IMG/VR virus record: IMGVR_UViG_3300034073_005389
Span: 186,001-250,000 of that record
Reading direction: 5' to 3' (one strand)
DNA length: 64,000 nt
Part shown: piece by piece, positions 23,800 through 37,983 of the stretch
Layout: the number at the start of each line of letters is the position of its first letter
Position numbering within the stretch: position 1 is the first letter of the stretch
Program-made: the position numbers and the translations under genes
The notes under the pieces: generated by a model
The model's database searches: none
What the model saw: the letters and a program-made list of their open reading frames with translations, nothing else
Told to the model about the DNA's origin: nothing

Positions 23800-24393
23800 A
23801 TGATTACTTTTATTATACCTACAATAAATAGAAATACTTTAAATAGATCAATTGATTGTTTATTATCTCAATATAACCCAAATTGGAAAGCAATTGTAGC
23901 TTTTGATGGTTTACCTGCCTTACATTTTCCAGACCCTAGAATTACTTCAATTAGTGTGCCTAAAACAGGAAAATTGAACCATGCAGGTAATGTAAGAAAT
24001 ATTGCTATTTCCAAAGCTGATACAGACTGGGTAGCTTTTCTTGATGATGATGATACTATTTCTAATGATTATGTAGATAGGTTAGTAGAAGAAACAAAAG
24101 AAAATCCAGAAGCTAAATGTATTATATTTAGAATGAAAACCTCATTTGACCCCGTTGGTATTTTACCAGAACCAAATCATAATACATTTTATAAGTGCAG
24201 GGTAGGGATTAGTTTTGCAATAAAAAAAGAAATAAATATAAACTTTGAACCATCTCACATAGAAGACTTTATTATTTTAAATAAAATAAGAGAAAATGGT
24301 CATAAAATAATTATTTCTCCTTATGTTACTTACTTTGTAAGAGAAAATCCTTGCCCAATGCCAGCCTTTAAAAGAGTTAAAATTAACTATTAA
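23800..24393 (+). CDS. GT2-like glycosyltransferase (GT-A fold)
   Basis: FIIPTINR..L.RSIDCL..Q, GNVRNIAI, WVAFLDDDD, EDF. Confidence 0.85.
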   Translation: MITFIIPTINRNTLNRSIDCLLSQYNPNWKAIVAFDGLPALHFPDPRITSISVPKTGKLNHAGNVRNIAISKADTDWVAFLDDDDTISNDYVDRLVEETKENPEAKCIIFRMKTSFDPVGILPEPNHNTFYKCRVGISFAIKKEININFEPSHIEDFIILNKIRENGHKIIISPYVTYFVRENPCPMPAFKRVKINY

Positions 24394-25337: not shown

Positions 25338-26327
25338 TCAAGTATTGTCTTTAATAAGTTTTTCTTGTTTCGCTAGCTTTAAATCATGCGCGATCATTTC
25401 ATCTACAAGCATTTCAAAAGTATACTCTGGTTTCCACCCTAATTTATTTCTTATTTTAGAAGAATCTCCTTGTAAGGCATCTACTTCTGTTGGGCGCAAA
25501 TACTTAGGATCAAATTTAACATATTGTTGATAATCTAAATCTAATTTATTAAATACTAGTTCTGCAAATTCTTTTACAGAATGCATTTCGCCAATAGACA
25601 CAACATAATCATCTGGAGTATCAGATTCCAAAATTTTAATCATTGCTTTTGCATAATCTTTTGCATGACCCCAATCTCTTTTTGCTTCAAGGTTTCCTAA
25701 ATATAATTCATTTTGTAAACCTAATTTAATTCTAGTAGCTGCTCTAGTAATTTTTCGAGTAACAAATGTTTCAGCTCTACGCTCGCTCTCATGGTTAAAA
25801 CAAATTGTATTGCAAGCAAATAAATTATAAGCTTCTCTGTAATTGATGGTAGAATAATATCCTGTTGCCTTTGCTACTGCGTAAGGAGATCGTGGATGAA
25901 AAGGAGTATTCTCATTTTGTGGCGGAGGCGTAGAGCCATAAAGCTCACTTGAAGAGCTTTGTAAAAATCTAGTGTTAGGACTATATTTTCTAATAGCTTC
26001 TAGGCACCTTATAACTCCAGTACCGGTTATGTCTACTGTGTACTCTGGAATATCAAAAGAAACTCTAACATGAGATTGTGCTGCCATGTTAAAGAACATA
26101 TCTGGATTTATGTCAGACACCAAGTTGGCTATGGAAGAATAGTCTGACAAATCACCATATATTAATTTAAGATTAGGATGATCGAACAAATGATCTATTC
26201 TATCTGTATTAAAAGAAGATGATCTACGTTTTAAACCATAAACTTTATAATCTTTTTCTAAAAGAATATCAGCTAAATACGAACCAGTTTGTCCTGTGAT
26301 ACCTGTAATAATTGCTGTTTTTGACAT
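25338..26327 (-). CDS. gmd: GDP-mannose 4,6-dehydratase
   Basis: ITGITGQTGSYL, AAQSHVRVSF, PRSPYAVAK, FNHESERR, LGNLEAKRDWGHA, RPTEVD. Confidence 0.97.
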   Translation of the reverse strand: MSKTAIITGITGQTGSYLADILLEKDYKVYGLKRRSSSFNTDRIDHLFDHPNLKLIYGDLSDYSSIANLVSDINPDMFFNMAAQSHVRVSFDIPEYTVDITGTGVIRCLEAIRKYSPNTRFLQSSSSELYGSTPPPQNENTPFHPRSPYAVAKATGYYSTINYREAYNLFACNTICFNHESERRAETFVTRKITRAATRIKLGLQNELYLGNLEAKRDWGHAKDYAKAMIKILESDTPDDYVVSIGEMHSVKEFAELVFNKLDLDYQQYVKFDPKYLRPTEVDALQGDSSKIRNKLGWKPEYTFEMLVDEMIAHDLKLAKQEKLIKDNT

Positions 26328-26344
26328 TGATTATTCCTATAAAT

Positions 26345-27235
26345 TTATATATAATTTTTAATTAGTTTAATAGCATTTTCTCGAGAAATATTTTGTTCTG
26401 GCTGAATAATTTTAGCTTTATATTTTATATTTTTTTTACCCCATTCACCAAGAAAAAAACTATTCGAATCAGACATAGGTAGTCTTGAAAAGGTAATCAT
26501 TTTTTTATTAGGATTATTTAAATTTTCTTGAGTCATACAAAATGTAAAAGGTCCTGAAGCCCTACCAATGATCATATCACAGTTTAAACTTAAATATGAT
26601 ATCTCATTTAAATCAGATCCAGATAACTTATTGACTATATCAGAAGTAAAAAAAATATTTAAAAATTTATTTTTTTCAAAATTAATTTTTTTTGTTAAAA
26701 TAAAATTTTTATTTTTATATAAAGAGGCTAGTTCAATAACAATTGAATCTAAGTTAATATTATAAGATTGATTTGATAAAGGTTGACCATTACAAAACAA
26801 AATGCTATTTTCAATATTTTTGATATTTTTAATATTAAAAACGTTATAATTTATAGATGGAAACATCTCTAATGGGTTTTTAAAAATATTTTCAATTTTT
26901 ATTGAAAAATGATTAAATATATCTTTAAATAAAAAATACAAACAATCAAGAGTGATTTTATATTTTTTTAAATATTTACTTTTGTTAGAGCCATACCAAG
27001 TATTTATGTAAATTTTATTGTCAATTTTAGTTATAAAATCATGTGATTTTATTTTTTTATAAATTTCAGAATCATATTGAATATATGACATGTCTTTCAA
27101 TATTTCCTCACCATTTTTGTGAGAATAAATATATTTGTATTTTTTTATTCCAATATTTTCACATAATTTTTTAACAAAATTTCTAGAAATATGGATATCT
27201 CCATTTCTGCAAGGATTATAAAAAATAATGTCCAT
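26345..27235 (-). CDS. GT9-like glycosyltransferase, family A copy 1
   Basis: NGDIHISR and DLNEISYLS..CD.IIGRASGP resemble the GT9 GD and L.E...L....D..IG.DSGP motifs. Confidence 0.55.
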   Translation of the reverse strand: MDIIFYNPCRNGDIHISRNFVKKLCENIGIKKYKYIYSHKNGEEILKDMSYIQYDSEIYKKIKSHDFITKIDNKIYINTWYGSNKSKYLKKYKITLDCLYFLFKDIFNHFSIKIENIFKNPLEMFPSINYNVFNIKNIKNIENSILFCNGQPLSNQSYNINLDSIVIELASLYKNKNFILTKKINFEKNKFLNIFFTSDIVNKLSGSDLNEISYLSLNCDMIIGRASGPFTFCMTQENLNNPNKKMITFSRLPMSDSNSFFLGEWGKKNIKYKAKIIQPEQNISRENAIKLIKNYI

Positions 27236-27249
27236 ATTTTTTATGTAAT

Positions 27250-27501
27250 TTATTTGCCATACATTTTAGTAGATCCTTGCTTATATAATTTTTGCAATTC
27301 TCCGGTACTACAAATATGGTTAATTTTTTCATCAATCTCTTGAATTAAGTCATTTCTTTGTTGATTGGCAATATTTGTTAATTTTGTGGCATCTGCGATT
27401 TGTTTATCAGAAGCGCTTTTATCCCTCTTTATATCTTCTGCCATCCAAATTCTAATATTTACTACTGTTAGTTTATCAATTAAATTGCCTATTGTATCCA
27501 T
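27250..27501 (-). CDS. small DUF4254-like helical protein, copy 1
   Basis: TIGNLIDKL...W..ED..R...NQQRNDLIQEID...KMY. Confidence 0.55.
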   Translation of the reverse strand: MDTIGNLIDKLTVVNIRIWMAEDIKRDKSASDKQIADATKLTNIANQQRNDLIQEIDEKINHICSTGELQKLYKQGSTKMYGK

Positions 27502-27508
27502 AATTACC

Positions 27509-28297
27509 TCAAATTTTGCATTTTAATATATCCTCTTGAGTATCATTTAACAATTTATTATAATTATAATTGTTTTTTACATCAGCCATAATCAATTTTT
27601 GATTATTTAAAATCTCAGTAGAATTTTCTTGAACAAAATAAAAAAAATCTAAATTATTTATATTGTACAAATCTTGTATAAATTCTCTTACGTTAAAAAG
27701 TCTACCAGCTCCTACAATAGAATCGCTTTTTGCCTTTATACTTTCTTCTACAATAAATTTAGTATGAACCATATCTCGATAAAAATTTAAATTATTTACT
27801 TGTATTTTCTTTTTATTTAAAATTGAATCAAATATTTTACCAAATAAAAAATATTGAGATCTATGAACTGAATTAAAATAAAATGGGTGAATAAATAAAA
27901 TTTTATTGTATCTAATGTCAAACTTTTGAAGCTCTTTTATTTTATTAAATAATAATAATTTTGATAAGATATATTCATTATTTAATGGATAAAAATTTGG
28001 AAGAGTGCTTAAAGATATTTTTCCAGATAAGTTATTCCACAACTCACATGTAGTATAACAAATTATCTTATTACAATTTTCAATTAAAGAATTAATTATT
28101 TTTAATGTATACAAATAATTAGGACTAATATAGTCAATATTATTTTCGTAAATTCTTTGCTCTGCAAAAGTAATATAAACTGAATTATATTCAGTATTTT
28201 TTAATAACTTAAAATCAATATCTCTAGAAGATATTTTAACATAGTCTTCAGGAAAATATTTTGATAATTGAGATGTATTACCAATTACTAAATTCAT
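27509..28297 (-). CDS. divergent NAD-dependent epimerase/dehydratase (extended SDR)
   Basis: Degenerate Gly motif VIGNTSQLS, TTCE, YILSK (YxxxK), YRDMVH, VGAG. Confidence 0.6.
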   Translation of the reverse strand: MNLVIGNTSQLSKYFPEDYVKISSRDIDFKLLKNTEYNSVYITFAEQRIYENNIDYISPNYLYTLKIINSLIENCNKIICYTTCELWNNLSGKISLSTLPNFYPLNNEYILSKLLLFNKIKELQKFDIRYNKILFIHPFYFNSVHRSQYFLFGKIFDSILNKKKIQVNNLNFYRDMVHTKFIVEESIKAKSDSIVGAGRLFNVREFIQDLYNINNLDFFYFVQENSTEILNNQKLIMADVKNNYNYNKLLNDTQEDILKCKI

Positions 28298-28899
28298 TTT
28301 TTTATTTTAAAAATATAATTATATTTTATTTTATTTACTAACTCATAACCAATAGACTTCATATATGTCTCATATTCTGGTAAATATAAATAATTTTCTA
28401 ACAAAATTATTTCAGGCTGATATTTTTTAGTATCAAATCCTTTCATTACTTCCAATTCCCATCCCTCTGTATCAATTGATACAAAATCAACTTTTTCTAC
28501 TTTTATTTTATCTAATAAAGTATTTAATTTTAAAATTTGAACTTTTATTTCTTTAATTTTATGTGATCCTTTTAAAGGATATTTAAGATCAATTGCAGAA
28601 TAACTAATACCATTTGCATGTTGCGGCCATCCAGTCTCTACAATTTTAAATGAAGATAATTTTTCTTCATTAGCGCAAGCAAATTGGTAAATTTCATTTC
28701 CGGCTTTCTTATGGCTTTCAACAAATTTAGGATTAGGATCGATGCAAATACATCTCCAACCATGATCTCTAAAATGCTTTGACATGCTAAAAAAATCAAC
28801 TGGACCAGCACCAACTTCAACCATAACTTTTTTTTCTAAAAAATTAGGAAAAAAATTTTCTCTGATATATTTATCTGTTTCTAATTCGGCGTAATACAT
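28294..28899 (-). CDS. FkbM family methyltransferase
   Basis: VEVGAG, IDPNP, DFVSIDTEGWELEVMKG. Confidence 0.88.
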   Translation of the reverse strand: MYYAELETDKYIRENFFPNFLEKKVMVEVGAGPVDFFSMSKHFRDHGWRCICIDPNPKFVESHKKAGNEIYQFACANEEKLSSFKIVETGWPQHANGISYSAIDLKYPLKGSHKIKEIKVQILKLNTLLDKIKVEKVDFVSIDTEGWELEVMKGFDTKKYQPEIILLENYLYLPEYETYMKSIGYELVNKIKYNYIFKIKK

Positions 28900-28905
28900 A
28901 AATTC

Positions 28906-30123
28906 CTAAAAACTTATAATTTCAAAATTGGGGCAAGGAACAATAAACTTACCACCATTGGCTAGATAATCTATTTCTCTATGATAAAATTCATTTATAA
29001 AATGCCAGGGTAGTACTAATAAATAGTCTGGCTTTTTTTTACGCATCTCATCTTCAGAATATATAGGAATATTAGTTCCAACAGTTTTTAAACCAAATTT
29101 ATAAACACTTCTTTCAGCAATTCCATCTATTAAAGTATGATCTAATCCAAAATACTGTAACAAAGTATTGCCTTTAGTAGATGCGCCATATCCCCAAATT
29201 ACTTTTCCCTTTTCTTTTTCTTTTTTTATAAAATTTACAGTTTTTTCTTTTAATTTATTAATTTTAATAAAAAAATTTTTCCAAGTATCAATAGAATTTA
29301 AATTTAATTTTTCTTCGTGTAAAAGTAAAGATTTGATTCTAAAATCACAAACATCTCTATAAGGTTGAGTGGCAAAAGTTTTTTCGTTTCCAACATCTTT
29401 CATTACATAAACTCTAAATGATCCGCCATTTGTATCGTTTAAATGACAATCAACAATTTTAAATTTATTTTTTTCTAAAAGATTTTTTAAATTAAATAAA
29501 GAATAATAATAAATATGTTCATGGCAAATATTATCAAACGCTAGTTGAGATAACATTAATGGAGTGTAACTTAATTGCAGCACCCATAAACCATCATCAT
29601 CTAAAACATCATATATATCTTTGACAAAAGAGTTGGGATCTTCTAAATCGTAAAACATAGCAATTGATGTAATAATTTTGGGTTTTAGATTACCGTATTT
29701 GCTATTTTTAAAATTAAAAGAAGTAAAATAATTTTGAATTATTACATCAGCATGTTTTGATGACTCTTTTACGAAAGATTCATCGGCAGGGTCTATGCCA
29801 ATTTTTATTAAATAATCTGGTAAAAAACTTAACAAAGTACCATCATTGCATGCAATATCTAACCAAACATCATTTTCTTTTAATTTTTTTACTTTTAAAA
29901 TAGATTCAGTAATGTCTTTTAATTCTTCTTTCATTGAATTATTTGTACCAGACCTATACCAATATTTGCCATACATTGTTTCTAGCGGTGCTGATTTTTC
30001 TAACCTAACCAACCCATCCTCAAGCATAACAAGTTTCATTTCAACTTTGTCACCTCTAGGCAGCTCATCATTTTTAATGAAATCAGAAACATAAAGGCTT
30101 CCCAAACTAAATAAATCTTTCAT
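28906..30123 (-). CDS. NDP-hexose C-methyltransferase (TcaB9/EryBIII-like)
   Basis: YWYRSG, LDIACNDGTLL, SIAMFYD, CHEHIYYYS, GGSFRV, GYGASTKGNTLL, PDYLLVLPWHF. Confidence 0.88.
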   Translation of the reverse strand: MKDLFSLGSLYVSDFIKNDELPRGDKVEMKLVMLEDGLVRLEKSAPLETMYGKYWYRSGTNNSMKEELKDITESILKVKKLKENDVWLDIACNDGTLLSFLPDYLIKIGIDPADESFVKESSKHADVIIQNYFTSFNFKNSKYGNLKPKIITSIAMFYDLEDPNSFVKDIYDVLDDDGLWVLQLSYTPLMLSQLAFDNICHEHIYYYSLFNLKNLLEKNKFKIVDCHLNDTNGGSFRVYVMKDVGNEKTFATQPYRDVCDFRIKSLLLHEEKLNLNSIDTWKNFFIKINKLKEKTVNFIKKEKEKGKVIWGYGASTKGNTLLQYFGLDHTLIDGIAERSVYKFGLKTVGTNIPIYSEDEMRKKKPDYLLVLPWHFINEFYHREIDYLANGGKFIVPCPNFEIISF

Positions 30124-30125
30124 TA

Positions 30126-30758
30126 TTAACCTCTAATATAAAAATCATTTACTTCTACTCTTTTATCTTTTTTCCAGCCCTTTTCTTTCAAAAAAGATTC
30201 AATAAAAGGCTCATTAAAATTATTCTCTATTACCATAAGTTTTGTATTATATTTATTTACATCAAAAGATTTTAGTACATCTAATTCATTTCCTTCAGTA
30301 TCTATAGAGATAAAATCTATTACTTTATGATTAAAGTGATTTGTTATGCACCAATCTAATCTTCTTGATTTTACTTTAATATCTTTTTTTTGTGGCTGTA
30401 ATCCTAATTTTTCATGACTAAGAATCAGTCTGTCATCAATTTCTAATCCGCTAATAGAAGATTGGTTTGCGGTTTTCATGGTAACAACAGTGAAATTAAC
30501 ATCATCTATATTTTTACTAGAAACAGCATAGTTAATAGCATTTTTTCTGTTCTTTTTTAGAGAGATAAAGTAATGTGGATTTGGCTCAATGCATAGCGCA
30601 TTCCACCCATTTTTTTCAAAATGCAATGTATTAGAAATAAAAATTCCGTCTACAGCACCAACTTCAATACAATTACCTGTTTTTTGATTGGGAAAATAAT
30701 TTTTTATTATTTTGTCAATTGGAGGATTAAATTGACCATGAAATTTAGTATATATCAT
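30126..30758 (-). CDS. FkbM family methyltransferase
   Basis: IEVGAVDG..SNT..FE..GW..LCIEPNP, DFISIDTEGNE. Confidence 0.88.
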   Translation of the reverse strand: MIYTKFHGQFNPPIDKIIKNYFPNQKTGNCIEVGAVDGIFISNTLHFEKNGWNALCIEPNPHYFISLKKNRKNAINYAVSSKNIDDVNFTVVTMKTANQSSISGLEIDDRLILSHEKLGLQPQKKDIKVKSRRLDWCITNHFNHKVIDFISIDTEGNELDVLKSFDVNKYNTKLMVIENNFNEPFIESFLKEKGWKKDKRVEVNDFYIRG

Positions 30759-30763
30759 TTTAC

Positions 30764-31672
30764 CTACATATTATTTTTAATTATGTTAAAAACATTTTCT
30801 AAGTTTGTTTCGTTTGATTGTATAATTTTTGCCTTATATTTAATATTTTTTTTACCCCAATCACCAAGATAAAAATCTCCTACACCGGATTTAGACAAAT
30901 TTGAAAAAGTAATCATTTTCTTATTAGGATTGTCAAAATTTTCTCTTACCATAGAAAAAGAAAATGGTCCAGAGGCTCTGCCAATAATTGTATCACATTT
31001 TAAACTTAAATAGGAAATTTCATTTAAATCTGAACCTGATTTTTTATTTATTATTTCTGAAGTAAAAAAAATATTTTTATTTTTTTTACTTAAATCATTA
31101 GTAACAATAAAATTAAAATTTGGATATTGAGAAGATAATTTTAAAATAATATTAGTAAAATCAAAATTTGATGCTTGATTTGACATAGCCAATCCATTAC
31201 ATATTAAAATATTTTTTTTATTTTTAAATTGATCATAAAATTGATCAATTTTACTAATTTCAAAAAAATTATAATTAATTTGTGGCAAAATGTCTAAAGG
31301 ATTAGCAAAAACATTTTCTATTTTTAGATTAAATTTTAAAAAAATATCTTTAAAAAGAAAATATAGGCAATCAAAAGTAATTCCATGTTTTTTTATATAC
31401 TTACTATTATCAGCAGAAAACCAAGTATTAATATAATTGTCATCATTATATTTTACAAATAAACTAGTATGAGGGACTTTTTTTCTAATTTCTTTTCCAT
31501 CATTTAATTTTAAATGACTTATATTGGGTAAATCTGCTAATAGGCAAGAATCATTTTTATGAAAATAAAAAAAATTATTTGAAGAAATTAATTTAGACAT
31601 AGCAGAAATAAAATTTCTAGAAATATGAATATCTCCATTTCTGCAATAATTATAAAATATAATTTTACTCAT
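30764..31672 (-). CDS. GT9-like glycosyltransferase, family A copy 2
   Basis: Same NGDIHISR and DLNEISYLSLKCD.IIGRASGP blocks as 26345. Confidence 0.55.
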   Translation of the reverse strand: MSKIIFYNYCRNGDIHISRNFISAMSKLISSNNFFYFHKNDSCLLADLPNISHLKLNDGKEIRKKVPHTSLFVKYNDDNYINTWFSADNSKYIKKHGITFDCLYFLFKDIFLKFNLKIENVFANPLDILPQINYNFFEISKIDQFYDQFKNKKNILICNGLAMSNQASNFDFTNIILKLSSQYPNFNFIVTNDLSKKNKNIFFTSEIINKKSGSDLNEISYLSLKCDTIIGRASGPFSFSMVRENFDNPNKKMITFSNLSKSGVGDFYLGDWGKKNIKYKAKIIQSNETNLENVFNIIKNNM

Positions 31673-31691
31673 TTATTATAATGGATTAATA

Positions 31692-32789
31692 TTATATTAA
31701 TTTACTATAATCTTTTACAGATTTTATAATAAAATTTATTTCGTTATTAGACAAATCTGGAAAACTAGGAAGAATAATACATTCTTTATTTAGAATTTTT
31801 GCGTTAGTTTCTGAATTTATTTGTATTCTATTATTACTTAATAAGTGATGATGGGTTGACGCTGGATAAAACATAGGTCTAATTTCTATATTTTTAGATT
31901 TAAAAAATGATTCTACTTTTTCATAAGAGTAGTTTCCGGCAATTCTAATTCCAAACATCCAATTAGAGTGAAAAGTATTTTCAGACTCTTCTTGAAGCAT
32001 AATATTATTAATATTGCTAAGCTCTTTTTTATATTTAAAAAATAAATTTTTCTTTTTTTCTAAAATCTCATCTAAAATCTCTAATTGCCCTAATAATATA
32101 GCAGCCTGAATGTTTGTAATTCGATAATTATAGCCTAATTCAGAATGAATAAACCTTGTGCTAGATTGCCCTTGTCCATGAACACATTTTATATATTGAA
32201 AAACATCATCATCATTGATGATAACGGCGCCACCTTCGCCAGAAGTTATATTTTTATTGCCAAAAAAAGAAATAGAAGAAGCAAAAGATTCTGTACCAGA
32301 ATATTTATTATTATATTTTCCAAATAATCCTTCACAATTATCTTCTACATAGACTAAATCTGGGTATTTTTCTTTTAAATTTGGAACATTAATTATATTC
32401 CCAAGGTTATGAACAACTAATAATGCATGATCTTTTTTATTTTTTATTTTAGATTCATCAATATTCCAGGTATTTAAATTAGCATCGATAGTTTGAATTT
32501 TATAATTTTTATCAAATAAAAAACTATTCCATGCAGCTACATATACATTATTTGGTGCCGTAATGTTTTTAATTTGCGGATATTTTTTATGCAGTGCTTT
32601 TGCTACAAGATGAGTTGCACTAGTTCCATTATTTACTAATAATAAATTTTTTACATTTAAAATTTCTTTTAATTTTTCTGTTGCTAAATCTATATATTTA
32701 CCTTGAGAAGATACCCAGGTAGAATCTAATGCATCATGTGCATAACGTAAAGATTTTTTAGTAAAAAATGGCTTATAAACTGGAATCAT
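31692..32789 (-). CDS. DegT/DnrJ/EryC1/StrS PLP aminotransferase (perosamine synthase-like)
   Basis: WVSSQG.YI, NGTSATHL, VEDNCE, SFFGNKNITSGEGG (PLP Lys), GYNYRITNIQAA, LPS. Confidence 0.92.
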   Translation of the reverse strand: MIPVYKPFFTKKSLRYAHDALDSTWVSSQGKYIDLATEKLKEILNVKNLLLVNNGTSATHLVAKALHKKYPQIKNITAPNNVYVAAWNSFLFDKNYKIQTIDANLNTWNIDESKIKNKKDHALLVVHNLGNIINVPNLKEKYPDLVYVEDNCEGLFGKYNNKYSGTESFASSISFFGNKNITSGEGGAVIINDDDVFQYIKCVHGQGQSSTRFIHSELGYNYRITNIQAAILLGQLEILDEILEKKKNLFFKYKKELSNINNIMLQEESENTFHSNWMFGIRIAGNYSYEKVESFFKSKNIEIRPMFYPASTHHHLLSNNRIQINSETNAKILNKECIILPSFPDLSNNEINFIIKSVKDYSKLI

Positions 32790-32803
32790 GATTTACCTAA
32801 AAA

Positions 32804-33112
32804 TTAATACGTTTTGTGTGATCTTTGTAAAAATTTACCATTATCTAATTCTTCGCCAGTCTGTAATGCTTTCATCATTTCAATTAATTTTGAATCAATT
32901 TCGTTAATTAACTGATTTCTTTGAACATTTAAATCACAAGCTTTTTTTAACACTTCCCATAATTTTTTTGCACCATCTTCAGAATCAAAATATTTTAATT
33001 TGTACTCATCAAAAGACATTCTTCTGATTTCATACAATAGCTCTTGATTGTTCCACATTTTCATATCTACAGTGCATAGTTTGTCAACTAAATTTCCAAG
33101 CGTATCAGACAT
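32804..33112 (-). CDS. small DUF4254-like helical protein, copy 2
   Basis: TLGNLVDKL...W..QE...NVQRNQLINEID...HKTY, paralog of 27250. Confidence 0.55.
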   Translation of the reverse strand: MSDTLGNLVDKLCTVDMKMWNNQELLYEIRRMSFDEYKLKYFDSEDGAKKLWEVLKKACDLNVQRNQLINEIDSKLIEMMKALQTGEELDNGKFLQRSHKTY

Positions 33113-33521
33113 TCTTGCTCCATTTCATTATAAATAATGATTCTTTTTCCTCTATAACAAAGAAATTATATTTTTTATATAAATTAATTGCTTTATAATT
33201 ATCTTTATCTACAGTTAGATAGATGTCTATGATGCCTAACACTTTAGATATATTAATCAGTATATCAATGCAGTAAGATCCTAAATGCTTACCAATATAA
33301 CTATCAGAAACTAAAATGCCCAGCCAAATCTTATTATTTTCTTCTTCTAAATGACAATAAGCTGCTGGAATATTATTTTCTAATATAATAAAAGACTGCA
33401 AGTGAGATTGCGTAATCTCTAGACGCCTAGTATTAAAATATCTAAATTTTTTAATACCCTCTTTAGAAGAGTTTAACAAACTAGACAGTAACTGCACATC
33501 AGTTCTTACAATCTTTCTCAT
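33105..33521 (-). CDS. GNAT family N-acetyltransferase
   Basis: WLGILV..SYIGKHLG, IYLTVDKDNYKAINLYKKYNF. Confidence 0.88.
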   Translation of the reverse strand: MRKIVRTDVQLLSSLLNSSKEGIKKFRYFNTRRLEITQSHLQSFIILENNIPAAYCHLEEENNKIWLGILVSDSYIGKHLGSYCIDILINISKVLGIIDIYLTVDKDNYKAINLYKKYNFFVIEEKESLFIMKWSKNV

Positions 33522-33524
33522 ACT

Positions 33525-34088
33525 TTATTTTCTTTTTAAGACGGCAAGCCTGTCAACAACTTCTACTAAAACCCACTTATCATATTTATTGCCTTCTAAA
33601 TACTTTTTAATATAAGTGCCTCTACCAAAAGTCCAATCATGGCACAATACATATGTACCTGTTTTTGAAAAATCTGATTCTATTTTTTTAAAATGAAATA
33701 AATTTTCAGATTCTTTCTTCTGAAAGAAAGATCCTTCTCCATAGTCTTTACCAGGAACAACCCAAGCAGAGTTTACTAATTTTTCATCACCTGCATCTAA
33801 AAAGTACATATCAGCAATAATTTTTCTGTCAAAAAATTTTAAAGAATCTTCTAAGTTCATTTCTACAATTTTCTTAGTAACATAATCGTTTAAAATTTTT
33901 TTAGCAGAATCAAAATACTCTTTACCTAATTCATAGGTAATTAATTTGCCTTTTTTATTATGCAATAAAGCTTTACAAAACTCTAAACCACTTGTAGCAG
34001 ATTTGCCTGTACCAAATTCAACTATCACATTTGGCTTCAATTTTGTTACATAATTAAATATTGCTTTCTTTTCTATTCCATTTGGCAT
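33525..34088 (-). CDS. class I SAM-dependent methyltransferase
   Basis: IVEFGTG, LITYEL, DSL, DMYFLDAG, LCHDW. Confidence 0.75.
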   Translation of the reverse strand: MPNGIEKKAIFNYVTKLKPNVIVEFGTGKSATSGLEFCKALLHNKKGKLITYELGKEYFDSAKKILNDYVTKKIVEMNLEDSLKFFDRKIIADMYFLDAGDEKLVNSAWVVPGKDYGEGSFFQKKESENLFHFKKIESDFSKTGTYVLCHDWTFGRGTYIKKYLEGNKYDKWVLVEVVDRLAVLKRK

Positions 34089-34101
34089 AATTCCTCTAAA
34101 T

Positions 34102-34938
34102 TTATTTCTTATTTAAATTTTTTAACAGTCTTTCTTTATTAATGTAATCTGGTAGATTTACACTAAGTTTTTTAATTCCTTTTTTCACTTCTTTGTTTGG
34201 ATGCATTCCAATATCATAACCATAGACTTGATTAGGTTTTACGTTATTTAAATTTACATTCCAACACTGAGTTAAAAAATCTTTTTTATTAGGCAAATAA
34301 GTTAGTTTGTATTTAACTCTACTATCTCCTACATAAGCAAAATGAAAATACCTAGACTCATTATCAAAATATGTTGGAGGATATTGCTTGGTAATGGTGC
34401 AATGACCATAAATATTTCCCTTTTTATGCCTAGCAATTCTACCCCACCCTAATGTCATGGTATCTTGCTTAAGGTCAGCGTTGCAAAAAATATGATCTGC
34501 GTCTTTAAAAAAGACATAATGAGGAAAGTCATATGATTGATGCTTGTCATTTGATGCAAAAAAATCATCTACTTTATCAAATGTTTCTTGAGTAAAGAAT
34601 TCATCAGCATCAGTGCACCAAAAGACATTCATATCATCTTTAACATATTGAGAGCCACGAACAAACATTTGTTTTTTTCCAGCCACTGACATACCAATAT
34701 CTGTTCTTACTCCAGATAAATCTTTATTATCTAATATAATAATCTTTTTTTCTGGATCTGGATATTTTTTTAAAAAATCTAGTGAGCCATCTGTAGAATT
34801 AGAATATGGCGTTTTAGTAACACATAAATCATAAAATATAAGTTGATCAAAATTTTTATACAAAAATGGTAACTTTTCTACTAGAAAAGGATATTCATTA
34901 TAACAAATTTGGAAATGGCAATGTTTTAATTTTTTCAT
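34102..34938 (-). CDS. GT2-like glycosyltransferase
   Basis: CYNEYPFL, STDGS..FL, WCTDADEFF (DxD), HFAY. Confidence 0.7.
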   Translation of the reverse strand: MKKLKHCHFQICYNEYPFLVEKLPFLYKNFDQLIFYDLCVTKTPYSNSTDGSLDFLKKYPDPEKKIIILDNKDLSGVRTDIGMSVAGKKQMFVRGSQYVKDDMNVFWCTDADEFFTQETFDKVDDFFASNDKHQSYDFPHYVFFKDADHIFCNADLKQDTMTLGWGRIARHKKGNIYGHCTITKQYPPTYFDNESRYFHFAYVGDSRVKYKLTYLPNKKDFLTQCWNVNLNNVKPNQVYGYDIGMHPNKEVKKGIKKLSVNLPDYINKERLLKNLNKK

Positions 34939-34943
34939 AATTA

Positions 34944-35507
34944 TTATCTTAAATAAATTGGTTTTAAATGTAAATATGGTCCTGGTACACGATCTTTAGG
35001 CTTATAATCTCTAATTTTAGAGGTATGAAAATGATAAGTTTTGATGGTTAATGAGGGATTAGATATTTTATATCCTGATTCTTTGATCTCATGCGCAACC
35101 CTATTATCACAACCAGGTCTCCCTAAGAAATAATTGCCCACTATTTTTTTTAATGAACCTTTAAAAATCCAAGTATCTTGAGAAAAAACTTTGTCCCAAA
35201 ATTTAATATTAGATGGCGAAAGATAATCCCATCTAGTTAAAGCATACGCTTCCTCATGATCCATTTTTAATGTTAAATTAATTGTATCATCAAAAAATAT
35301 ATCAGAGTTGCATATGATGTTTATGTCATCAGGACCGGTATTCTGATTAATTTTATCAAAATAAAAATCAAAAGTTAATCTATTTTGATGATTAATTAAA
35401 ATTACATTTAAATGTTTATTTTGTAAATTTTTATTTTTACAAAAATCTATTTCATAAGCTCTTTTAGGATCTGGATGTTTAAAATAATTATAATATAAAT
35501 TGATCAT
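34944..35507 (-). CDS. short GT-A-like protein, family B copy 1
   Basis: CNSDIFFD, ALTRWD, SQDTWIF, LG.PGCDNR, KTYH.H.S; paralog of 36461. Confidence 0.55.
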   Translation of the reverse strand: MINLYYNYFKHPDPKRAYEIDFCKNKNLQNKHLNVILINHQNRLTFDFYFDKINQNTGPDDINIICNSDIFFDDTINLTLKMDHEEAYALTRWDYLSPSNIKFWDKVFSQDTWIFKGSLKKIVGNYFLGRPGCDNRVAHEIKESGYKISNPSLTIKTYHFHTSKIRDYKPKDRVPGPYLHLKPIYLR

Positions 35508-35528
35508 ATATTTATATGCAAATATGGT

Positions 35529-36458
35529 TTATTTTTTTATATAATTATTAATTATATTTAAAACTGCAGAATCATTTGTCTCTTTAGACTCAACAATTCT
35601 GGCAGGATATTTTATATTTTTAAGACCCCAATCACCCAGCCAAAAATTCTTACCTCCACTTAACCCAGAAAAAGTCAATAATGTCTTGTTTGGATTTAAA
35701 TAATTTTCTTTACACATAGAAAAAGTGAATGCGCCTGATGCTCTACCAATAACCAAATCGCATTTTAAACTTAAATATGAGGTTTCGTTTAAATCAGAAC
35801 CTTTTGTCTTTTTTATAATATCTGAGGAATAAACCACATTAGGATATGCCCTCCTATCAAAATTAGGATCTTTTTCTTTAAAAGTTAAAATCCATTTTCT
35901 ATTTGGATGCATTTTGGCTAATTTTAAAATAATAGGTGTAAAATTAAAATTTTTAGCCTGACCAGATCTAGCGTGATTATTACAAACTAGAACAGGAGAT
36001 ACTTTATTTTGAGAGTGAAAAGTATCAATATTTTTAATAAATGTAGGGTGCAAATTTTTATAATTAATTGCAGGAAAAAAATAAAAAGGGTCTTTTGATA
36101 TATCTTCTAATTTTAGACCCAATCCCGCATAAATATCTTGAAATATAAAATACAAAGTATCAAAGTTAAATCCATTAGCTTTATTTGAATACTTATAATT
36201 ATTTACTCCATACCAAGTACCAGCATAAAAAGTATTATTTTTAACTATGTGAACATTTTTATTGTCTGCCTGTTTTAACAAATTAGCATCAAATTTTAAA
36301 CCTTTTATATCTTCTAATAGTTTGGGGTCATTTTTATGAGAAAAATATATCTCATATTTATTTCCTAAATGCTTAACAACTTCAGAAATAAAAGTTCTGG
36401 AGATATGAATATCTCCATTATTAAAATGATTAAAGAAAACAATTTTATTATAGCTCAT
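35529..36458 (-). CDS. GT9-like glycosyltransferase, family A copy 3
   Basis: NGDIHISR, DLNETSYLSLKCDLVIGRASG. Confidence 0.55.
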   Translation of the reverse strand: MSYNKIVFFNHFNNGDIHISRTFISEVVKHLGNKYEIYFSHKNDPKLLEDIKGLKFDANLLKQADNKNVHIVKNNTFYAGTWYGVNNYKYSNKANGFNFDTLYFIFQDIYAGLGLKLEDISKDPFYFFPAINYKNLHPTFIKNIDTFHSQNKVSPVLVCNNHARSGQAKNFNFTPIILKLAKMHPNRKWILTFKEKDPNFDRRAYPNVVYSSDIIKKTKGSDLNETSYLSLKCDLVIGRASGAFTFSMCKENYLNPNKTLLTFSGLSGGKNFWLGDWGLKNIKYPARIVESKETNDSAVLNIINNYIKK

Positions 36459-36460
36459 AA

Positions 36461-37021
36461 TTATGTTGGAGAAATTTGTTTATAAGGTCCAGGAACAGTG
36501 TCATGCTTTTTGCTATAATTTCTTATATTAGAAGAATGTACATGATATGTTTTTATTGTTTTACTAGGATTAGATAATCTATATCCCGCTTTTACTATTT
36601 CATAAGCGATCCTATTATCACATCCAGGCATACCTAGAAATATATCGCCATATAAATTAGATCTAATTTTACCTTTAAAAATCCAAGTATCTTGGCTATC
36701 AGGTCTGTTAAACAATTCGGCAGAGCCGTTTGTTTTTAAATCCCATCTGGATAATGCATAACAATCATCTACCGCCATATTCTTACAATTTAAGATTGTA
36801 TCGTCTAAATAAATATCTGAATTACAAACTATATTAATATCATTTGGAAGCGTAACACTATTTATTTTTTTAAAATAATAAGAATATGTTAATCTATCTT
36901 GACTTTCTATTACAATAGTATTTATGTTTTTATTAGATAAATTTTTATTTAAACAAAAATCAATTTCTTTCTGTCTAGCTGGGTTTTTATCTTTATAATA
37001 ATTATAAATTAGATTAATCAT
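36461..37021 (-). CDS. short GT-A-like protein, family B copy 2
   Basis: CNSDIYLD, ALSRWD, SQDTWIF, LGMPGCDNR. Confidence 0.55.
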   Translation of the reverse strand: MINLIYNYYKDKNPARQKEIDFCLNKNLSNKNINTIVIESQDRLTYSYYFKKINSVTLPNDINIVCNSDIYLDDTILNCKNMAVDDCYALSRWDLKTNGSAELFNRPDSQDTWIFKGKIRSNLYGDIFLGMPGCDNRIAYEIVKAGYRLSNPSKTIKTYHVHSSNIRNYSKKHDTVPGPYKQISPT

Positions 37022-37983
37022 AGTAAGTGACTTAAATTTAACATGTTAATTAATTCTAGTATTTTAGAAGTAAAAGTATGCTCCATTAATACTTTTCTAT
37101 GACCATTTTTACCAACTTCTAATGCTTTATCTGGATTATTTTTACAAAACTGTATGATAGAGTGTATATCCTCTATAGATTTAGCAATAAATAGATCCTG
37201 ACCATCTACAAAATAACTATCATAATTAGGGAAGTCCCAAGAAATAACTGGTCTGCCTGAAGCTAAGCACATTAATAATCTATCAGAAAAATAATGTGCA
37301 ACCTCATTAAAATGACTAATGCTTAGTACGCAAACACTAGAGTTATAAACCTCGTTAGTTTGAGGCATGGGTATAAATTTGGAAGGGACATTATAATTCC
37401 TTCCAAACAAACCAAATCTGTCTTTATATCTAGTATATAAGCTATGCGCAACTTGTGATCTTAATGATGACGATGGAAAGTTTCCATAATGGTTAGCTGC
37501 AAATGAAATATCGTATTTAAATGATGAATAATTTTTAGGAAAATATAATTTAGGATCATATCCTATTTGCCAATAACAAGGATTCTTGCAGCCGCTATTT
37601 TTATATAAATCTAATTGACCCGTACTAGATATCAAAGAGTAATCGCATCCTTGAGATATTTTACAAAATCCGCTATCAGCATATGCCCTACAATCTCCGG
37701 TCCAGTTAGTAATAACTACTCCAGGAGACAATTTTCTAGCTTCATTTAAAACTTCTACACTAAGAAGCCCGCTAAATTGGAGCTGCATGTGAATCAATTT
37801 TGGTTGAAAAGTTCTAACTACCTTTAAAAACCCTTCATTTACACTTTCTCTTCTTTTAGAATTTAACCAAATTCTATTAAAATCATAAATTTCTAATTTA
37901 ACTCCAGCATTGTGCCAAGCATCATATGTAGCTTGCTGCACTGTATTATTATCATTTAATGGTAAATATAAAACTTTTAACAT
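37018..37983 (-). CDS. GT-B glycosyltransferase (CgeB / Glyco_trans_1_2-like)
   Basis: WTGD, YDISF.AN, YFSDRL..CLASG, GH.KV..EHT. Confidence 0.8.
   Translation of the reverse strand: MLKVLYLPLNDNNTVQQATYDAWHNAGVKLEIYDFNRIWLNSKRRESVNEGFLKVVRTFQPKLIHMQLQFSGLLSVEVLNEARKLSPGVVITNWTGDCRAYADSGFCKISQGCDYSLISSTGQLDLYKNSGCKNPCYWQIGYDPKLYFPKNYSSFKYDISFAANHYGNFPSSSLRSQVAHSLYTRYKDRFGLFGRNYNVPSKFIPMPQTNEVYNSSVCVLSISHFNEVAHYFSDRLLMCLASGRPVISWDFPNYDSYFVDGQDLFIAKSIEDIHSIIQFCKNNPDKALEVGKNGHRKVLMEHTFTSKILELINMLNLSHLL

What the first reader, a model, noticed from the sequence alone, without database searches (positions are those of the whole stretch)
26345..36458. Triplicated GT9-like family interleaved with duplicated minimal DUF4254-like proteins
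Seen: three ~300-aa paralogs with NGDIHISR and DLNE.SYLS..CD..IGRASG, each beside a different sugar-modifying set, and two 83-102-aa paralogs (GNL.DKL..W..NxQRN.LI.EID). Recalled, not verified: bacterial DUF4254 proteins are about twice this size and often neighbour GT9 genes. Inference: repeated transferase-plus-helper modules, each adding one sugar; the helper may be a homodimeric half-domain with a role in nucleotide-sugar or acceptor handling.
Basis: partly seen in the sequence, partly recalled or inferred. Interest (0 to 1): 0.6.

Follow-up and report, generated by a model that had tools for sequence, protein, structure and literature searches.

The report
Phage GT9-like transferases with half-DUF4254 partners
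A 361-kb phage carries a sugar-building gene island with three copies of an unnamed, heptosyltransferase-like glycosyltransferase and two small helical proteins that are single-repeat "halves" of the bacterial DUF4254 protein. Comparison with about 240 other viral contigs shows that each small-protein type travels with one kind of sugar-tailoring enzyme plus a GT9-like transferase, which gives the first testable lead on what DUF4254 does.

Summary
Three paralogs of 296, 302 and 309 aa (43-56% identical) and two small paralogs of 83 and 102 aa (34% identical) lie on the minus strand. They sit in a roughly 17-kb operon-like island of nucleotide-sugar and transferase genes, and they are the only copies in the genome.

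The host replicon is a 361-kb phage (rIIA, lysozyme, tmRNA, IF3), not a bacterium.

Family A matches no Pfam, NCBIfam or PHROG model. It folds confidently as GT-B, and GT9 heptosyltransferases are clearly its nearest solved structures (Z 13-16, against 11 or less for other GT-B enzymes). A bridging phage family links it to GT9 by profile comparison. The GT9 D-T-G-x-x-H motif aligns to A-S-G-x-F-[S/T], so the donor is probably not ADP-heptose.

The small proteins are single helical-hairpin units. Full-length DUF4254 holds two such units in tandem.

In viral contigs, 59 of 79 family-A loci have a small protein nearby. The S2 type travels with an aminotransferase and an N-acetyltransferase, and is sometimes fused to the GNAT. 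The S1 type travels with a sugar C-methyltransferase. Both travel with one or another GT9-like family (73 of 80 and 58 of 79 loci).

Best reading: donor-type-specific accessory proteins coupling GDP-6-deoxyhexose tailoring branches to GT9-like transferases. The mechanism and the acceptor remain inferred.

The parts
23800..24393 (+). GT2-family glycosyltransferase (197 aa), the only plus-strand gene of the island
   Evidence: PF00535 E 4.8e-14
24390..25331 (-). NAD-dependent epimerase/reductase, like GDP-fucose synthase (GMER)
   Evidence: PF01370 E 3e-43 and PF16363. Homologues occur in 33 of 79 family-A loci.
25338..26327 (-). GDP-mannose 4,6-dehydratase (GMD)
   Evidence: PF16363 E 1e-125. 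Homologues occur in 41 of 79 family-A loci.
26345..27235 (-). Family A paralog A1 (296 aa), GT9-like GT-B glycosyltransferase
   Evidence: Alignment. Sister of A2 in the tree, support 95. GC 20%.
27250..27501 (-). S1 (83 aa), single-repeat DUF4254-like helical protein of the 'Sc' subtype. It lies 14 nt upstream of A1.
   Evidence: PF14063 38.5 bits against a cut-off of 27, profile positions 3-60 of 144. This subtype travels with the C-methyltransferase in 68 of 79 loci.
27509..28297 (-). Unknown 262-aa protein that recurs beside S1-type genes
   Evidence: No Pfam family. Homologue directly beside S1 in L168, L170, L177 and L179. 49% identical in L170.
28294..28899 (-). FkbM-family methyltransferase
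   Evidence: PF05050 E 4.5e-18
28906..30123 (-). NDP-sugar C-methyltransferase (CMT, TylC3-like)
   Evidence: PF08484 E 1e-44 and PF13489. 70% identical in L170.
30126..30758 (-). FkbM-family methyltransferase, paralog of 28294-28899 (32% identical)
   Evidence: PF05050 E 5.5e-20; paralogy
30764..31672 (-). Family A paralog A2 (302 aa). This is the sequence that was folded.
   Evidence: Model pLDDT 95.2, pTM 0.93. GT9 structures rank top.
31692..32789 (-). DegT/DnrJ/EryC1 sugar aminotransferase
   Evidence: PF01041 E 7e-60. Present in 74 of 80 S2-type loci.
32804..33112 (-). S2 (102 aa), single-repeat DUF4254-like helical protein of the 'Sb' subtype. Its start overlaps the GNAT gene's end by 8 nt.
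   Evidence: PF14063 18.4 bits, below the cut-off. Model pLDDT 89, a helical hairpin. 64-81% identical in the 80 viral loci kept.
33105..33521 (-). GNAT N-acetyltransferase, directly upstream of S2
   Evidence: PF00583 E 2.5e-9. GNAT-S2 fusion proteins P0165 and P0195 exist elsewhere.
33525..34088 (-). Unknown 187-aa protein
   Evidence: No family found. Homologue in 8 of 80 S2-type loci.
34102..34938 (-). Unknown 278-aa protein with a faint GT2 resemblance
   Evidence: PF00535 and PF13704, E 0.1-0.2 only
34944..35507 (-). Family B paralog B1 (187 aa), unknown, with an NSDIFFDD (DXD-like) motif
   Evidence: 55% identical to B2. No Pfam family.
35529..36458 (-). Family A paralog A3 (309 aa). 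It occupies the position of the single family-A gene in the cassette shared by huge phages.
   Evidence: Tree. The order MT820, GT1-like, B, A is shared in about a dozen of the viral gene maps examined (L008, L010, L011, L015, L016, L019, L022); the individual genes occur in 14-17 of the 79 loci.
36461..37021 (-). Family B paralog B2 (186 aa)
37018..37983 (-). GT1-like glycosyltransferase (Glyco_trans_1_2)
   Evidence: PF13524 E 6.5e-17
37985..40447 (-). 820-aa protein with two SAM-methyltransferase domains and an unassigned C-terminal part
   Evidence: PF13649 and PF08241, two stretches each. Conserved at the head of the cassette.

Best explanation
The region is the core of a glycan-building island in a huge (361-kb) phage.

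**Sugar supply (inferred from the enzyme families).** GMD makes GDP-4-keto-6-deoxymannose. Three branches then tailor it:
- reduction or epimerisation by the GMER-like enzyme;
- transamination by DegT, followed by N-acetylation by the GNAT;
- C- and O-methylation by the C-methyltransferase and the FkbM enzymes.

**Family A.** A1, A2 and A3 are soluble GT-B glycosyltransferases of the GT9 superfamily. They arose by duplication within this phage lineage. Each probably transfers a different tailored sugar. They keep an invariant N-terminal Gly-Asp but have replaced the GT9 donor-site D-T-G-x-x-H motif, so the donor is most likely a GDP-6-deoxyhexose derivative rather than ADP-heptose.

**S1 and S2.** Each is a single copy of the helical-hairpin unit that is duplicated in tandem in bacterial DUF4254. 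I infer that each forms a homodimeric four-helix bundle and serves as a donor-type-specific accessory protein. S2 would serve the amino / N-acetyl branch and S1 the C-methyl branch, coupling that branch to a GT9-like transferase.

**Shown:** fold, homology, repeat architecture, copy number and gene-neighbourhood statistics.

**Inferred:** donor identity, dimerisation, physical coupling, and the acceptor. For the acceptor I favour a cytoplasmic-face target, either virion protein or the host LPS core, because no membrane protein is encoded in the island.
For: **Phage context.** rIIA phrog_612 at 1e-90 and FtsK-like and HNH proteins; lysozyme, IF3 and Thg1; tmRNA; virus record of 361,490 bp.

**Family A**
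- AlphaFold model with pLDDT 95.2.
- Foldseek top hits are GT9 structures: 3tov, 1psw and WaaC.
- VIA Z-scores: 16.0, 14.3, 14.1 and 12.9 for the GT9 structures 3tov, 1psw (WaaF), 2h1f (WaaC) and 4rap (TibC); a plant NDH-PSI chain (7wff_a) scores 14.5; the next other GT-B is 11.2 or lower.
- Nearest Atlas clusters are 92-100% viral, and one related cluster is 81% PF01075.
- hhalign against a GT9 alignment gives E 9.5e-5 over 163 columns of the C-terminal domain.
- A bridging phage family, c6, matches GT9 at 98.2% probability (E 3e-14) and family A at 93.9% (E 1.5e-7).

**Lineage-specific triplication.** A1+A2 group with support 95. A1, A2, A3 and L005/L007 group with support 98.

**S as a half of DUF4254.** The S profile hits twice in tandem in P0261 and P0163, which score 158-164 bits to PF14063.

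**Neighbourhood counts**
- Family A to S: 59 of 79 loci.
- S2 loci: DegT 74 of 80, GNAT 40 of 80.
- S1 loci: C-methyltransferase 68 of 79. Across the two S-chosen locus sets, Fisher p is 1e-26 for DegT and 4e-29 for the C-methyltransferase.
- Either a GNAT or a non-homologous PglD-like acetyltransferase sits directly upstream of S2.
- GNAT-S2 and S1-FkbM-like fusion proteins exist.
- Some GT9-like family (A, c0, c4 or c6) lies near 73 of 80 S2 loci and 58 of 79 S1 loci.
- A bacterial DUF4254 gene sits next to a PF01075 gene (PMC9425974).

**Soluble machinery.** No hydrophobic segment typical of a membrane helix occurs in any island protein.

**GDP-sugar context.** GMD is present in 41 of 79 family-A loci, DegT in 49 and GMER in 33.
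Against: - No biochemical data exist for family A or for any DUF4254 protein.
- Family A scores nothing against PF01075: 0 of 66 members at E up to 1.
- The direct profile match to GT9 is only 58.7% probability.
- c0 and c4 are short (about 235-240 aa), and their GT9 link is moderate (87-90%).
- S proteins are far better conserved than family A in the syntenic L170 contig: 77-83% against 30-35%. That fits a partner that is a conserved enzyme or small molecule better than a tight complex between S and family A.
- A3 has no S gene of its own.
- The S2 model is a generic hairpin with no informative structural match.
- All loci were chosen by one of the two partners from one viral collection, and near-identical contigs inflate the counts.
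Confidence: 0.55

Rival explanations
1. S proteins are components, catalytic or activating, of the nucleotide-sugar tailoring step itself. S2 would act with the aminotransferase and N-acetyltransferase, and S1 with the C-methyltransferase. They would have no direct relation to the transferase, and the link to GT9-like genes would merely reflect shared membership of one operon.
For: - The subtype-specific associations are the strongest numbers in the data: S2 with DegT in 74 of 80 loci, and S1 with the C-methyltransferase in 68 of 79.
- The acetyltransferase upstream of S2 is replaced by a non-homologous one (GNAT or PglD-like).
- GNAT-S2 and S1-FkbM-like fusions exist.
- S is 77-83% identical where family A is 30-35% identical.
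- Many invariant polar residues in the S2 type (D10, K11, R30, D60, N62, R65, D73, H99, K100, Y102) suggest a ligand or active site.
Against: - Bacterial two-repeat DUF4254 sits beside an ordinary GT9 gene (PMC9425974). In the one bacterial locus examined, no aminotransferase or sugar C-methyltransferase was called among the neighbouring genes.
- The known GDP-perosamine and N-acetylperosamine pathways need no extra protein (established biochemistry, recalled).
- A GT9-like gene is present in 73-91% of S loci, and family c4 abuts S1 directly with a median gap of 0.
Confidence: 0.25
2. S is a dedicated structural subunit of the GT9-like transferase and helps build its acceptor or membrane-binding site. 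Its correlation with tailoring enzymes would be secondary.
For: - 59 of 79 family-A loci have an S gene; 58 are on the same strand; about 30 abut or overlap, which suggests translational coupling.
- S subtypes cluster on the family-A tree: 27 changes against a shuffled mean of 50.
- DUF4254 and GT9 are adjacent in bacteria.
Against: - One S subtype pairs with several different GT9-like families. S2 pairs with A or c0; S1 pairs with A, c4 or c6.
- S is conserved far more than family A.
- A3 has no S gene of its own.
- S is fused to GNAT, FkbM-like and GT-A-like proteins among the 150 best hits, but never to a GT9-like protein.
Confidence: 0.15
3. The island is not part of a phage. It would be a bacterial O-antigen or LOS island next to ssrA that was mis-binned as a 'provirus'.
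For: - IMG/VR labels the record 'provirus'.
- A tmRNA gene, a classic island insertion site, lies about 260 nt from the nearest gene called in that direction (Thg1-like) and about 1.7 kb from the first sugar gene.
- Island GC is 20-31% against 33% for the record.
- Bacterial-type topA, ligA and purA-like genes lie nearby.
Against: - Both flanks carry phage genes: rIIA, phage lysozyme, HNH and FtsK-like proteins.
- Family A and S relatives are overwhelmingly viral: 92-100% of the family-A clusters and 81-100% of the S clusters with known taxa.
- 163 viral contigs encode family A, including phage records of 340-458 kb and of 636-735 kb.
- A scan of 185,579 species genomes with family-A patterns found nothing, though the patterns were narrow.
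- The same cassette lies beside Thg1 and the 194-aa unknown in other huge phages.
- tmRNA, IF3 and Thg1 are typical huge-phage cargo (recalled from the huge-phage literature).
Confidence: 0.05

Closest known systems
CAZy GT9 / Pfam PF01075 heptosyltransferases (WaaC, WaaF, Veillonella 3tov, TibC)
   Same: - Two-Rossmann GT-B fold; these are the best structural matches (Z 12.9-16.0, 230-259 aligned residues).
- Soluble, about 300-350 aa.
- Gly-Asp near the N-terminus.
- The C-terminal block 'L.E...L...a.l.ig..SG' aligns.
- A DUF4254-type gene is a genomic neighbour (PMC9425974).
   Different: - No PF01075 hit in any of 66 members.
- 8-12% identity to the solved structures.
- GT9's D-T-G-x-x-H, with its invariant His, aligns to A-S-G-x-F-[S/T] preceded by a near-invariant Arg.
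- The gene context is GDP-mannose-derived 6-deoxy sugars; no ADP-heptose pathway gene was seen in the island.
- The family is essentially viral.
Pfam PF14063 DUF4254 (bacterial, about 200 aa, function unknown)
   Same: - S1 passes the Pfam threshold.
- The same conserved signature: G..I[DE]KL...W..[ED], then N..R..LI..ID, then a K-x-Y tail.
- The same linkage to GT9-type genes.
   Different: - Phage S proteins hold one hairpin unit (76-138 aa). DUF4254 holds two in tandem.
- S2 is below the Pfam threshold.
- Phage subtypes are each tied to a particular tailoring enzyme and are sometimes fused to it.
Glycan and 'LPS' gene clusters of large phages (for example cyanomyoviruses; PMC12801897) and of giant viruses
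   Same: Large virus-encoded sets of nucleotide-sugar enzymes, methyltransferases and soluble glycosyltransferases.
   Different: The published phage clusters I read are described in terms of standard families. Neither the family A / S pairing nor the modular triplication is described there. The only two papers in the library that mention DUF4254 give no function.
GDP-perosamine / N-acetylperosamine pathway (GMD, Per, PerB), recalled from established biochemistry
   Same: GMD, a DegT-family aminotransferase and an N-acetyltransferase occur together, as in the GNAT-S2-DegT core.
   Different: The known pathway has no small helical component. Here S2 is inserted between the acetyltransferase and the aminotransferase in most loci.

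Membership tests
GT9 (Pfam PF01075 Glyco_transf_9) | Match to the PF01075 profile at or above the gathering score | tested here: not met
   No hit at E up to 1 for A1, A2 or A3. None for 66 family members. None anywhere in the 361-kb record at E up to 10.
GT9 (Pfam PF01075 Glyco_transf_9) | GT-B fold, with GT9 structures as the nearest neighbours | tested here: met
   - Model pLDDT 95.2, pTM 0.93.
- Foldseek: 3tov at E 3.8e-8 and 1psw at 6.6e-7.
- VIA Z: 16.0, 14.3, 14.1 and 12.9 for GT9 entries, against 11.2 or lower for other GT-B enzymes.
- Atlas TM 0.69 to a bacterial cluster that is 100% PF01075.
GT9 (Pfam PF01075 Glyco_transf_9) | Detectable sequence homology at profile level | tested here: inconclusive
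   - Direct hhalign of A2 against A8: probability 58.7%, E 9.5e-5, C-terminal domain only.
- Through the bridging family c6: 93.9% to family A and 98.2% to GT9.
GT9 (Pfam PF01075 Glyco_transf_9) | Conserved C-terminal D-[ST]-G-x-x-H donor-site motif. The His is invariant in my GT9 alignment (H304 of A8). | tested here: not met
   In the hhalign alignment the motif aligns to A-S-G-x-F-[S/T]. Neither the His nor the Asp is conserved.
GT9 (Pfam PF01075 Glyco_transf_9) | N-terminal Gly-Asp/Glu after strand 1 (the catalytic Asp13 of WaaC, recalled) | tested here: inconclusive
   G13-D14 is invariant in 66 members and follows strand 1 of the model. The GT9 alignment has an invariant G52 followed by E. 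hhalign did not align the N-terminal domains, so positional equivalence is not shown.
GT9 (Pfam PF01075 Glyco_transf_9) | ADP-heptose (or another heptose) as donor | not testable with these tools
   Only context is available: GMD, GMER, DegT and the C-methyltransferase are neighbours. That points to GDP-6-deoxyhexoses.
DUF4254 (Pfam PF14063) | Match to PF14063 at or above the gathering score (27 bits) | tested here: met
   - S1: 38.5 bits, E 1.3e-9.
- S2: 18.4 bits, below threshold. It is joined to S1 by BLASTP at E 3e-10 and by the common profile.
DUF4254 (Pfam PF14063) | Full-length architecture covering the 144-position profile (two hairpin units) | tested here: not met
   - S1 covers profile positions 3-60 only, and S2 covers 39-65.
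- Full-length P0261 and P0163 cover 3-144 and contain two S units each.
DUF4254 (Pfam PF14063) | Genomic linkage to a GT9-type transferase | tested here: met
   - 59 of 79 family-A loci.
- 73 of 80 S2 loci and 58 of 79 S1 loci have some GT9-like family nearby.
- One bacterial example and the literature (PMC9425974).

The most novel reading that the evidence does not exclude
The single-repeat DUF4254 proteins are a new class of small, dimeric, donor-specific factors in nucleotide-sugar metabolism. Each subtype would recognise one tailored GDP-4-keto-6-deoxyhexose derivative, or the enzyme that makes it, and would be required for its formation or its hand-over to a GT9-like transferase. In the strongest form, S supplies in trans the sugar-binding residues that family A has lost from the GT9 D-T-G-x-x-H motif, or it catalyses a so-far unassigned step such as a keto-isomerisation before transamination or C-methylation.
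Probability: 0.2. Interest if true: 0.8.

Novelty: new variant of a known kind. Interest (0 to 1): 0.58.

Why it matters
**DUF4254.** It is a widespread bacterial family with no known function. The only published clue in the library searched is that it neighbours RfaF (PMC9425974).
- This locus and its viral relatives show that the family is built from a repeatable hairpin unit.
- Phages carry the unit singly, in at least three subtypes.
- Each subtype is tied to one sugar-tailoring chemistry plus a GT9-like transferase.
- This turns 'unknown' into concrete experiments with small soluble proteins: add S2 to GMD + DegT + GNAT, add S1 to GMD + C-methyltransferase, and add either to the transferase.

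**Transferases.** The work defines a large, almost purely viral branch of the GT9 superfamily. It comprises family A and the related families c0, c4 and c6. No Pfam, NCBIfam or PHROG model captures family A, so phage glycan islands are under-annotated at present.

**Phage biology.** The island is a 17-kb, all-soluble machine in a huge phage that makes methylated, N-acetylated 6-deoxy sugars. It raises the question of whether such phages glycosylate their own virions or rewrite the host envelope.

Tried and rejected
- **Complex prediction.** A1 with S1, using my own alignments A4 and A5, scored ipSAE 0.00 in both runs, so there is no verdict. It counts neither for nor against binding.
- **S2 structure search.** Foldseek of the S2 model against the PDB gave only generic helical hairpins and designed bundles, E above 1. 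An hmmsearch of the S profile against PDB sequences gave nothing below E 0.4.
- **Family A against PDB sequences.** Only a chance KpsC hit at E 1.2.
- **Family A against one GT9 sequence.** hhalign probability 2.3%. The comparison needed a GT9 alignment.
- **Family libraries.** NCBIfam and PHROGs gave nothing for families A, S and B or for the unknowns.
- **Giant-virus idea.** A search for the NCLDV capsid family PF04451 found nothing. The controls were silent too, so this is uninformative. I dropped the idea because of rIIA, the lysozyme and a terminase-like ORF.
- **Genome-contig scan with family-A patterns.** No confirmed hit. The patterns came from the three paralogs only, so this is weak evidence of absence in cellular genomes.
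- **Relatives of the record.** Not available for a virus record.
- **NCBI-sourced homologues.** The cluster-member look-up gave no names or organisms.
- **The 208-aa ORF beside family A in L053.** It first looked like a full-length DUF4254. It matches only the first helix and is probably another family.
- **A pseudaminic- or legionaminic-acid pathway, with family A as a PseG/LegG-like hydrolase.** Rejected, because none of the island's genes matched a NeuB-like synthase or a CMP-transferase family.
- **PurZ.** The purA-like gene at 43318-44457 scores 126 bits against a cut-off of 300, so it is not PurZ.
- Not used.

Full report
**1. What is in the sequence**

Between 23.8 and 40.4 kb of the window, twenty tightly packed genes form an operon-like island. 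All but one are on the minus strand, and the gaps between them run from -8 to +50 nt.

- A1, 26345-27235
- A2, 30764-31672
- A3, 35529-36458

They align over their full length at 43-56% identity. NGDIHISR and DLNE.SYLSL.CD..IGRASG are invariant in all three.

The two small ORFs are S1 (27250-27501, 83 aa) and S2 (32804-33112, 102 aa). They are 34% identical, E 3e-10.

HMM searches of every ORF of the whole 361-kb record find exactly three A genes and two S genes, all here.

The other genes are:
- GMD and a GMER-like reductase
- a DegT aminotransferase and a GNAT
- a TylC3-type sugar C-methyltransferase
- two FkbM methyltransferases
- a GT2 and a GT1-like transferase
- an 820-aa double methyltransferase
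- four proteins with no family

None of the island proteins has a hydrophobic stretch of membrane-helix strength. No flippase, polymerase or polyprenol-phosphate transferase family was matched.

**2. Where it is**

The window is positions 186,001-250,000 of a 361,490-bp IMG/VR virus record. The flanks carry:
- rIIA (phrog_612, 1e-90) and FtsK-like, HNH and DNA-methyltransferase genes
- a phage lysozyme, IF3, a Thg1-like enzyme, and RmlA- and RmlD-like genes
- a complete tmRNA at 21749-22102
- bacterial-type topoisomerase I, NAD-ligase and a PurA-like gene
- a terminase-like ORF elsewhere in the record

Family A hits only the 636-735-kb 'uncultured phage' records in the GenBank phage set. I therefore treat this as a huge phage. 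A bacterial island is a minor rival.

Record GC is 33%. The island is lower, and A1, A2 and the 262-aa unknown are at 20%.

**3. Family A**

No Pfam, NCBIfam or PHROG model matches the three paralogs. None of 66 relatives touches PF01075 even at E = 1.

The family is large:
- 468 word-search hits, all 'hypothetical'
- 163 viral-contig stretches
- nearest Atlas clusters 92-100% viral

With a 66-sequence alignment, A2 folds at pLDDT 95.2 and pTM 0.93 into two Rossmann-like domains.
- Foldseek puts the GT9 structures first: 3tov, WaaF (1psw) and WaaC.
- The exhaustive VIA search gives Z 16.0 (3tov), 14.3 (WaaF), 14.1 (WaaC) and 12.9 (TibC), plus 14.5 for a plant NDH-PSI chain (7wff_a). A step down follows, to 11.2 and below for epimerases and GT1 enzymes.

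I built a GT9 alignment (A8) from the PF01075 gene that sits next to a bacterial DUF4254.
- Profile-profile comparison aligns the C-terminal domains: 163 columns, E 9.5e-5, probability 59%.
- A phage family found later, c6, bridges the two. It matches GT9 at 98.2% and family A at 93.9%.

Family A is therefore a divergent, essentially viral branch of the GT9 superfamily. 'GT9-like' is right. 'A GT9 member' in the Pfam sense is not.

In the alignment, the GT9 motif D-T-G-x-x-H, whose His is invariant in A8, corresponds to A-S-G-x-F-[S/T] after a near-invariant Arg. The N-terminal G13-D14 is invariant.

Taken with the neighbours, this points to GDP-6-deoxyhexose donors rather than ADP-heptose. 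GMD occurs in 41 of 79 family-A loci, DegT in 49 and GMER in 33. This is inference.

**4. The small proteins**

S1 passes Pfam's DUF4254 threshold (38.5 against 27 bits) but covers only profile positions 3-60 of 144. S2 is sub-threshold.

S2 models as a long helical hairpin with a short inserted helix and a flexible C-terminal tail, pLDDT 89. Structure searches return only generic hairpins.

A profile of 51 phage S proteins finds 1680 representative clusters. The top 150 have a median length of 105 aa.

Every full-length DUF4254 examined contains two tandem S units. P0261 (199 aa) and P0163 (227 aa) score 158-164 bits to PF14063. In P0261 the units lie at residues 40-94 and 101-183, each with i-E of 1e-11 or better.

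Dimerisation is the natural inference but was not tested.

Conserved features are G..I[D/E]KL...W, an invariant Arg in N..R..LI..ID, and a terminal K-x-Y.

**5. Co-conservation, in both directions**

*Starting from family A (79 viral loci, 6-kb flanks).*
- 59 loci have an S gene.
- 58 of those are on the same strand.
- About 30 abut or overlap.

S falls into subtypes that cluster on the family-A tree:
- Sa, 114-123 aa
- Sb, the S2 type
- Sc, the S1 type

*Starting from S.*

| Loci chosen by | DegT | GNAT | C-methyltransferase | FkbM | GMD | Family A |
|---|---|---|---|---|---|---|
| S2 type (80 loci) | 74 | 40 | 3 | 17 | 47 | 27 |
| S1 type (79 loci) | 10 | 1 | 68 | 36 | 53 | 25 |

Across the two S-chosen locus sets, Fisher p is 1e-26 for DegT and 4e-29 for the C-methyltransferase.

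- The gene directly upstream of S2 is a GNAT in 29 loci. In the huge-phage cassette it is a non-homologous PglD-like acetyltransferase.
- Fusion proteins exist: GNAT-S2 (P0165, P0195), S1-FkbM-like (P0253) and GT-A-like-S1 (P0269).
- In the window itself the GNAT gene's end overlaps S2's start by 8 nt.

The S loci that lack family A are not without a transferase. They carry other families that profile comparison ties to GT9:
- c0, about 233 aa, 87%
- c4, about 242 aa, 90%, directly abutting S1
- c6, about 299 aa, 98%

Taking A, c0, c4 and c6 together, 73 of 80 S2 loci and 58 of 79 S1 loci have a GT9-like gene within 8 kb. These families hardly ever co-occur.

In bacteria, the two-repeat DUF4254 P0261 is 2 nt from a PF01075 gene. 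A published survey lists DUF4254 as 'linked to RfaF' (PMC9425974).

**6. How the triplication arose**

Many huge phages share a single-copy cassette: MT820, GT1-like, B, A, acetyltransferase, S2, a roughly 280-aa unknown, DegT, GMD, GMER, sometimes followed by the 194-aa unknown and Thg1. A3 occupies the ancestral position.

A1 and A2 are sisters (support 95). They sit inside a clade with A3 and L005/L007 (support 98).

The stretch from FkbM through the C-methyltransferase, FkbM and the 262-aa unknown to S1 matches modules seen with other GT9-like families (L031, L037, L168-L179).

A 170-kb phage contig (L170) has the order A, GNAT, S2, DegT, unknown, A, C-methyltransferase, FkbM, S1, 262-aa unknown, GMD. 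Identities to the window are:
- S2 77%
- S1 83%
- C-methyltransferase 70%
- DegT 55%
- family A only 30-35%

A 21-kb relative has the full three-copy order.

The picture is a mosaic of donor-tailoring modules. Each carries its own S subtype, and the modules are combined with lineage-specific duplicates of the transferase.

**7. Interpretation**

*Shown:*
- the fold and superfamily of family A
- the single-repeat nature of S
- the copy numbers
- the neighbourhood statistics

*Inferred:*
- A1, A2 and A3 each add a different GDP-mannose-derived sugar.
- S proteins dimerise.
- S proteins act as donor-type-specific accessory factors between a tailoring branch and a GT9-like transferase.

The very high conservation of S relative to family A, and the fusions to tailoring enzymes, keep open the rival that S acts in sugar tailoring itself. 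The single complex prediction gave no verdict.

The acceptor is unknown. The all-soluble gene set fits either cytoplasmic glycosylation of virion proteins (the GT9 member TibC glycosylates protein) or action on the host LPS core at the inner face of the membrane (as WaaC and WaaF do).

**8. Novelty**

The GT9-DUF4254 linkage was known only as a line in a table. The following appear undescribed in the library searched:
- the viral GT9-like families
- the repeat architecture of DUF4254
- the one-repeat phage subtypes and their enzyme-specific partnerships

I class the finding as a new variant of a known kind.

**Caveats**
- Loci were selected on one partner from one collection, and near-identical contigs inflate the counts.
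- ORFs were called mechanically.
- The GT9 links of c0 and c4 are moderate.

Noticed in passing
window 21749-22102 (-): A complete one-piece tmRNA (Rfam 114 bits) with tag peptide ANDNAFAPMALAA, encoded by the phage beside the glycan island. A related groundwater contig (L084) carries SmpB next to its own A-S sugar cluster.
   Followed up: partly
window 19444-19980 (-), 22365-23147 (-): Phage-encoded translation initiation factor IF3 (both domains) and a Thg1-like tRNA-His guanylyltransferase. Thg1 and the 194-aa unknown at 23165-23749 recur beside the glycan cassette in other huge phages (L009, L012, L019, L033).
   Followed up: partly
window 34944-35507 and 36461-37021 (-): Family B: two 186/187-aa paralogs (55% identical) flanking A3. 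They match no family and have a conserved NSDI[FY][FL]DD (DXD-like) motif, so they may be a minimal GT-A transferase. A homologue is present in 17 of 79 family-A loci, usually just upstream of A.
   Followed up: partly
window 43318-44457 (-): A PurA-like adenylosuccinate synthase that falls below every equivalog cut-off. Its best match is an archaeal-type PurA model at 393 bits against a cut-off of 445. The PurZ model scores only 126 bits against a cut-off of 300, so it is probably not a Z-base enzyme, but it is an unusual phage gene.
   Followed up: no
window 26345-27235, 27509-28297, 30764-31672: A1, the 262-aa unknown and A2 have only 20% GC. A3 has 26%, and the whole record has 33%. The cause, whether recent import or relaxed composition, is unexplained.
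   Followed up: no
window 17604-19439 (-): A second, separate pair of sugar genes (RmlD-like and RmlA-like nucleotidyltransferase). IF3, the lysozyme, the tmRNA and Thg1 lie between this pair and the main island.
   Followed up: no
P0148, P0269, P0129 (metagenomic proteins): The S unit also occurs fused to non-sugar or unknown N-terminal parts. P0148 is one example: a repeated Cys-rich, HNH-like region followed by S2. These may be gene-calling read-throughs or real fusions.
   Followed up: no
L132:8862-9800, L107:5104-5919 (viral loci near S2): An ATP-grasp enzyme (11 loci) and a GT10-like fucosyltransferase (15 loci) recur in S2-type islands. The GT10-like enzyme is a further hint of GDP-sugar chemistry.
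   Followed up: no
G000 record label: IMG/VR classes the 361-kb record as a 'provirus' with 97% completeness. I saw no bacterial flank within the window, so the label may be an artefact of the bacterial-type genes (topA, ligA, purA, tmRNA, IF3) that huge phages carry.
   Followed up: no
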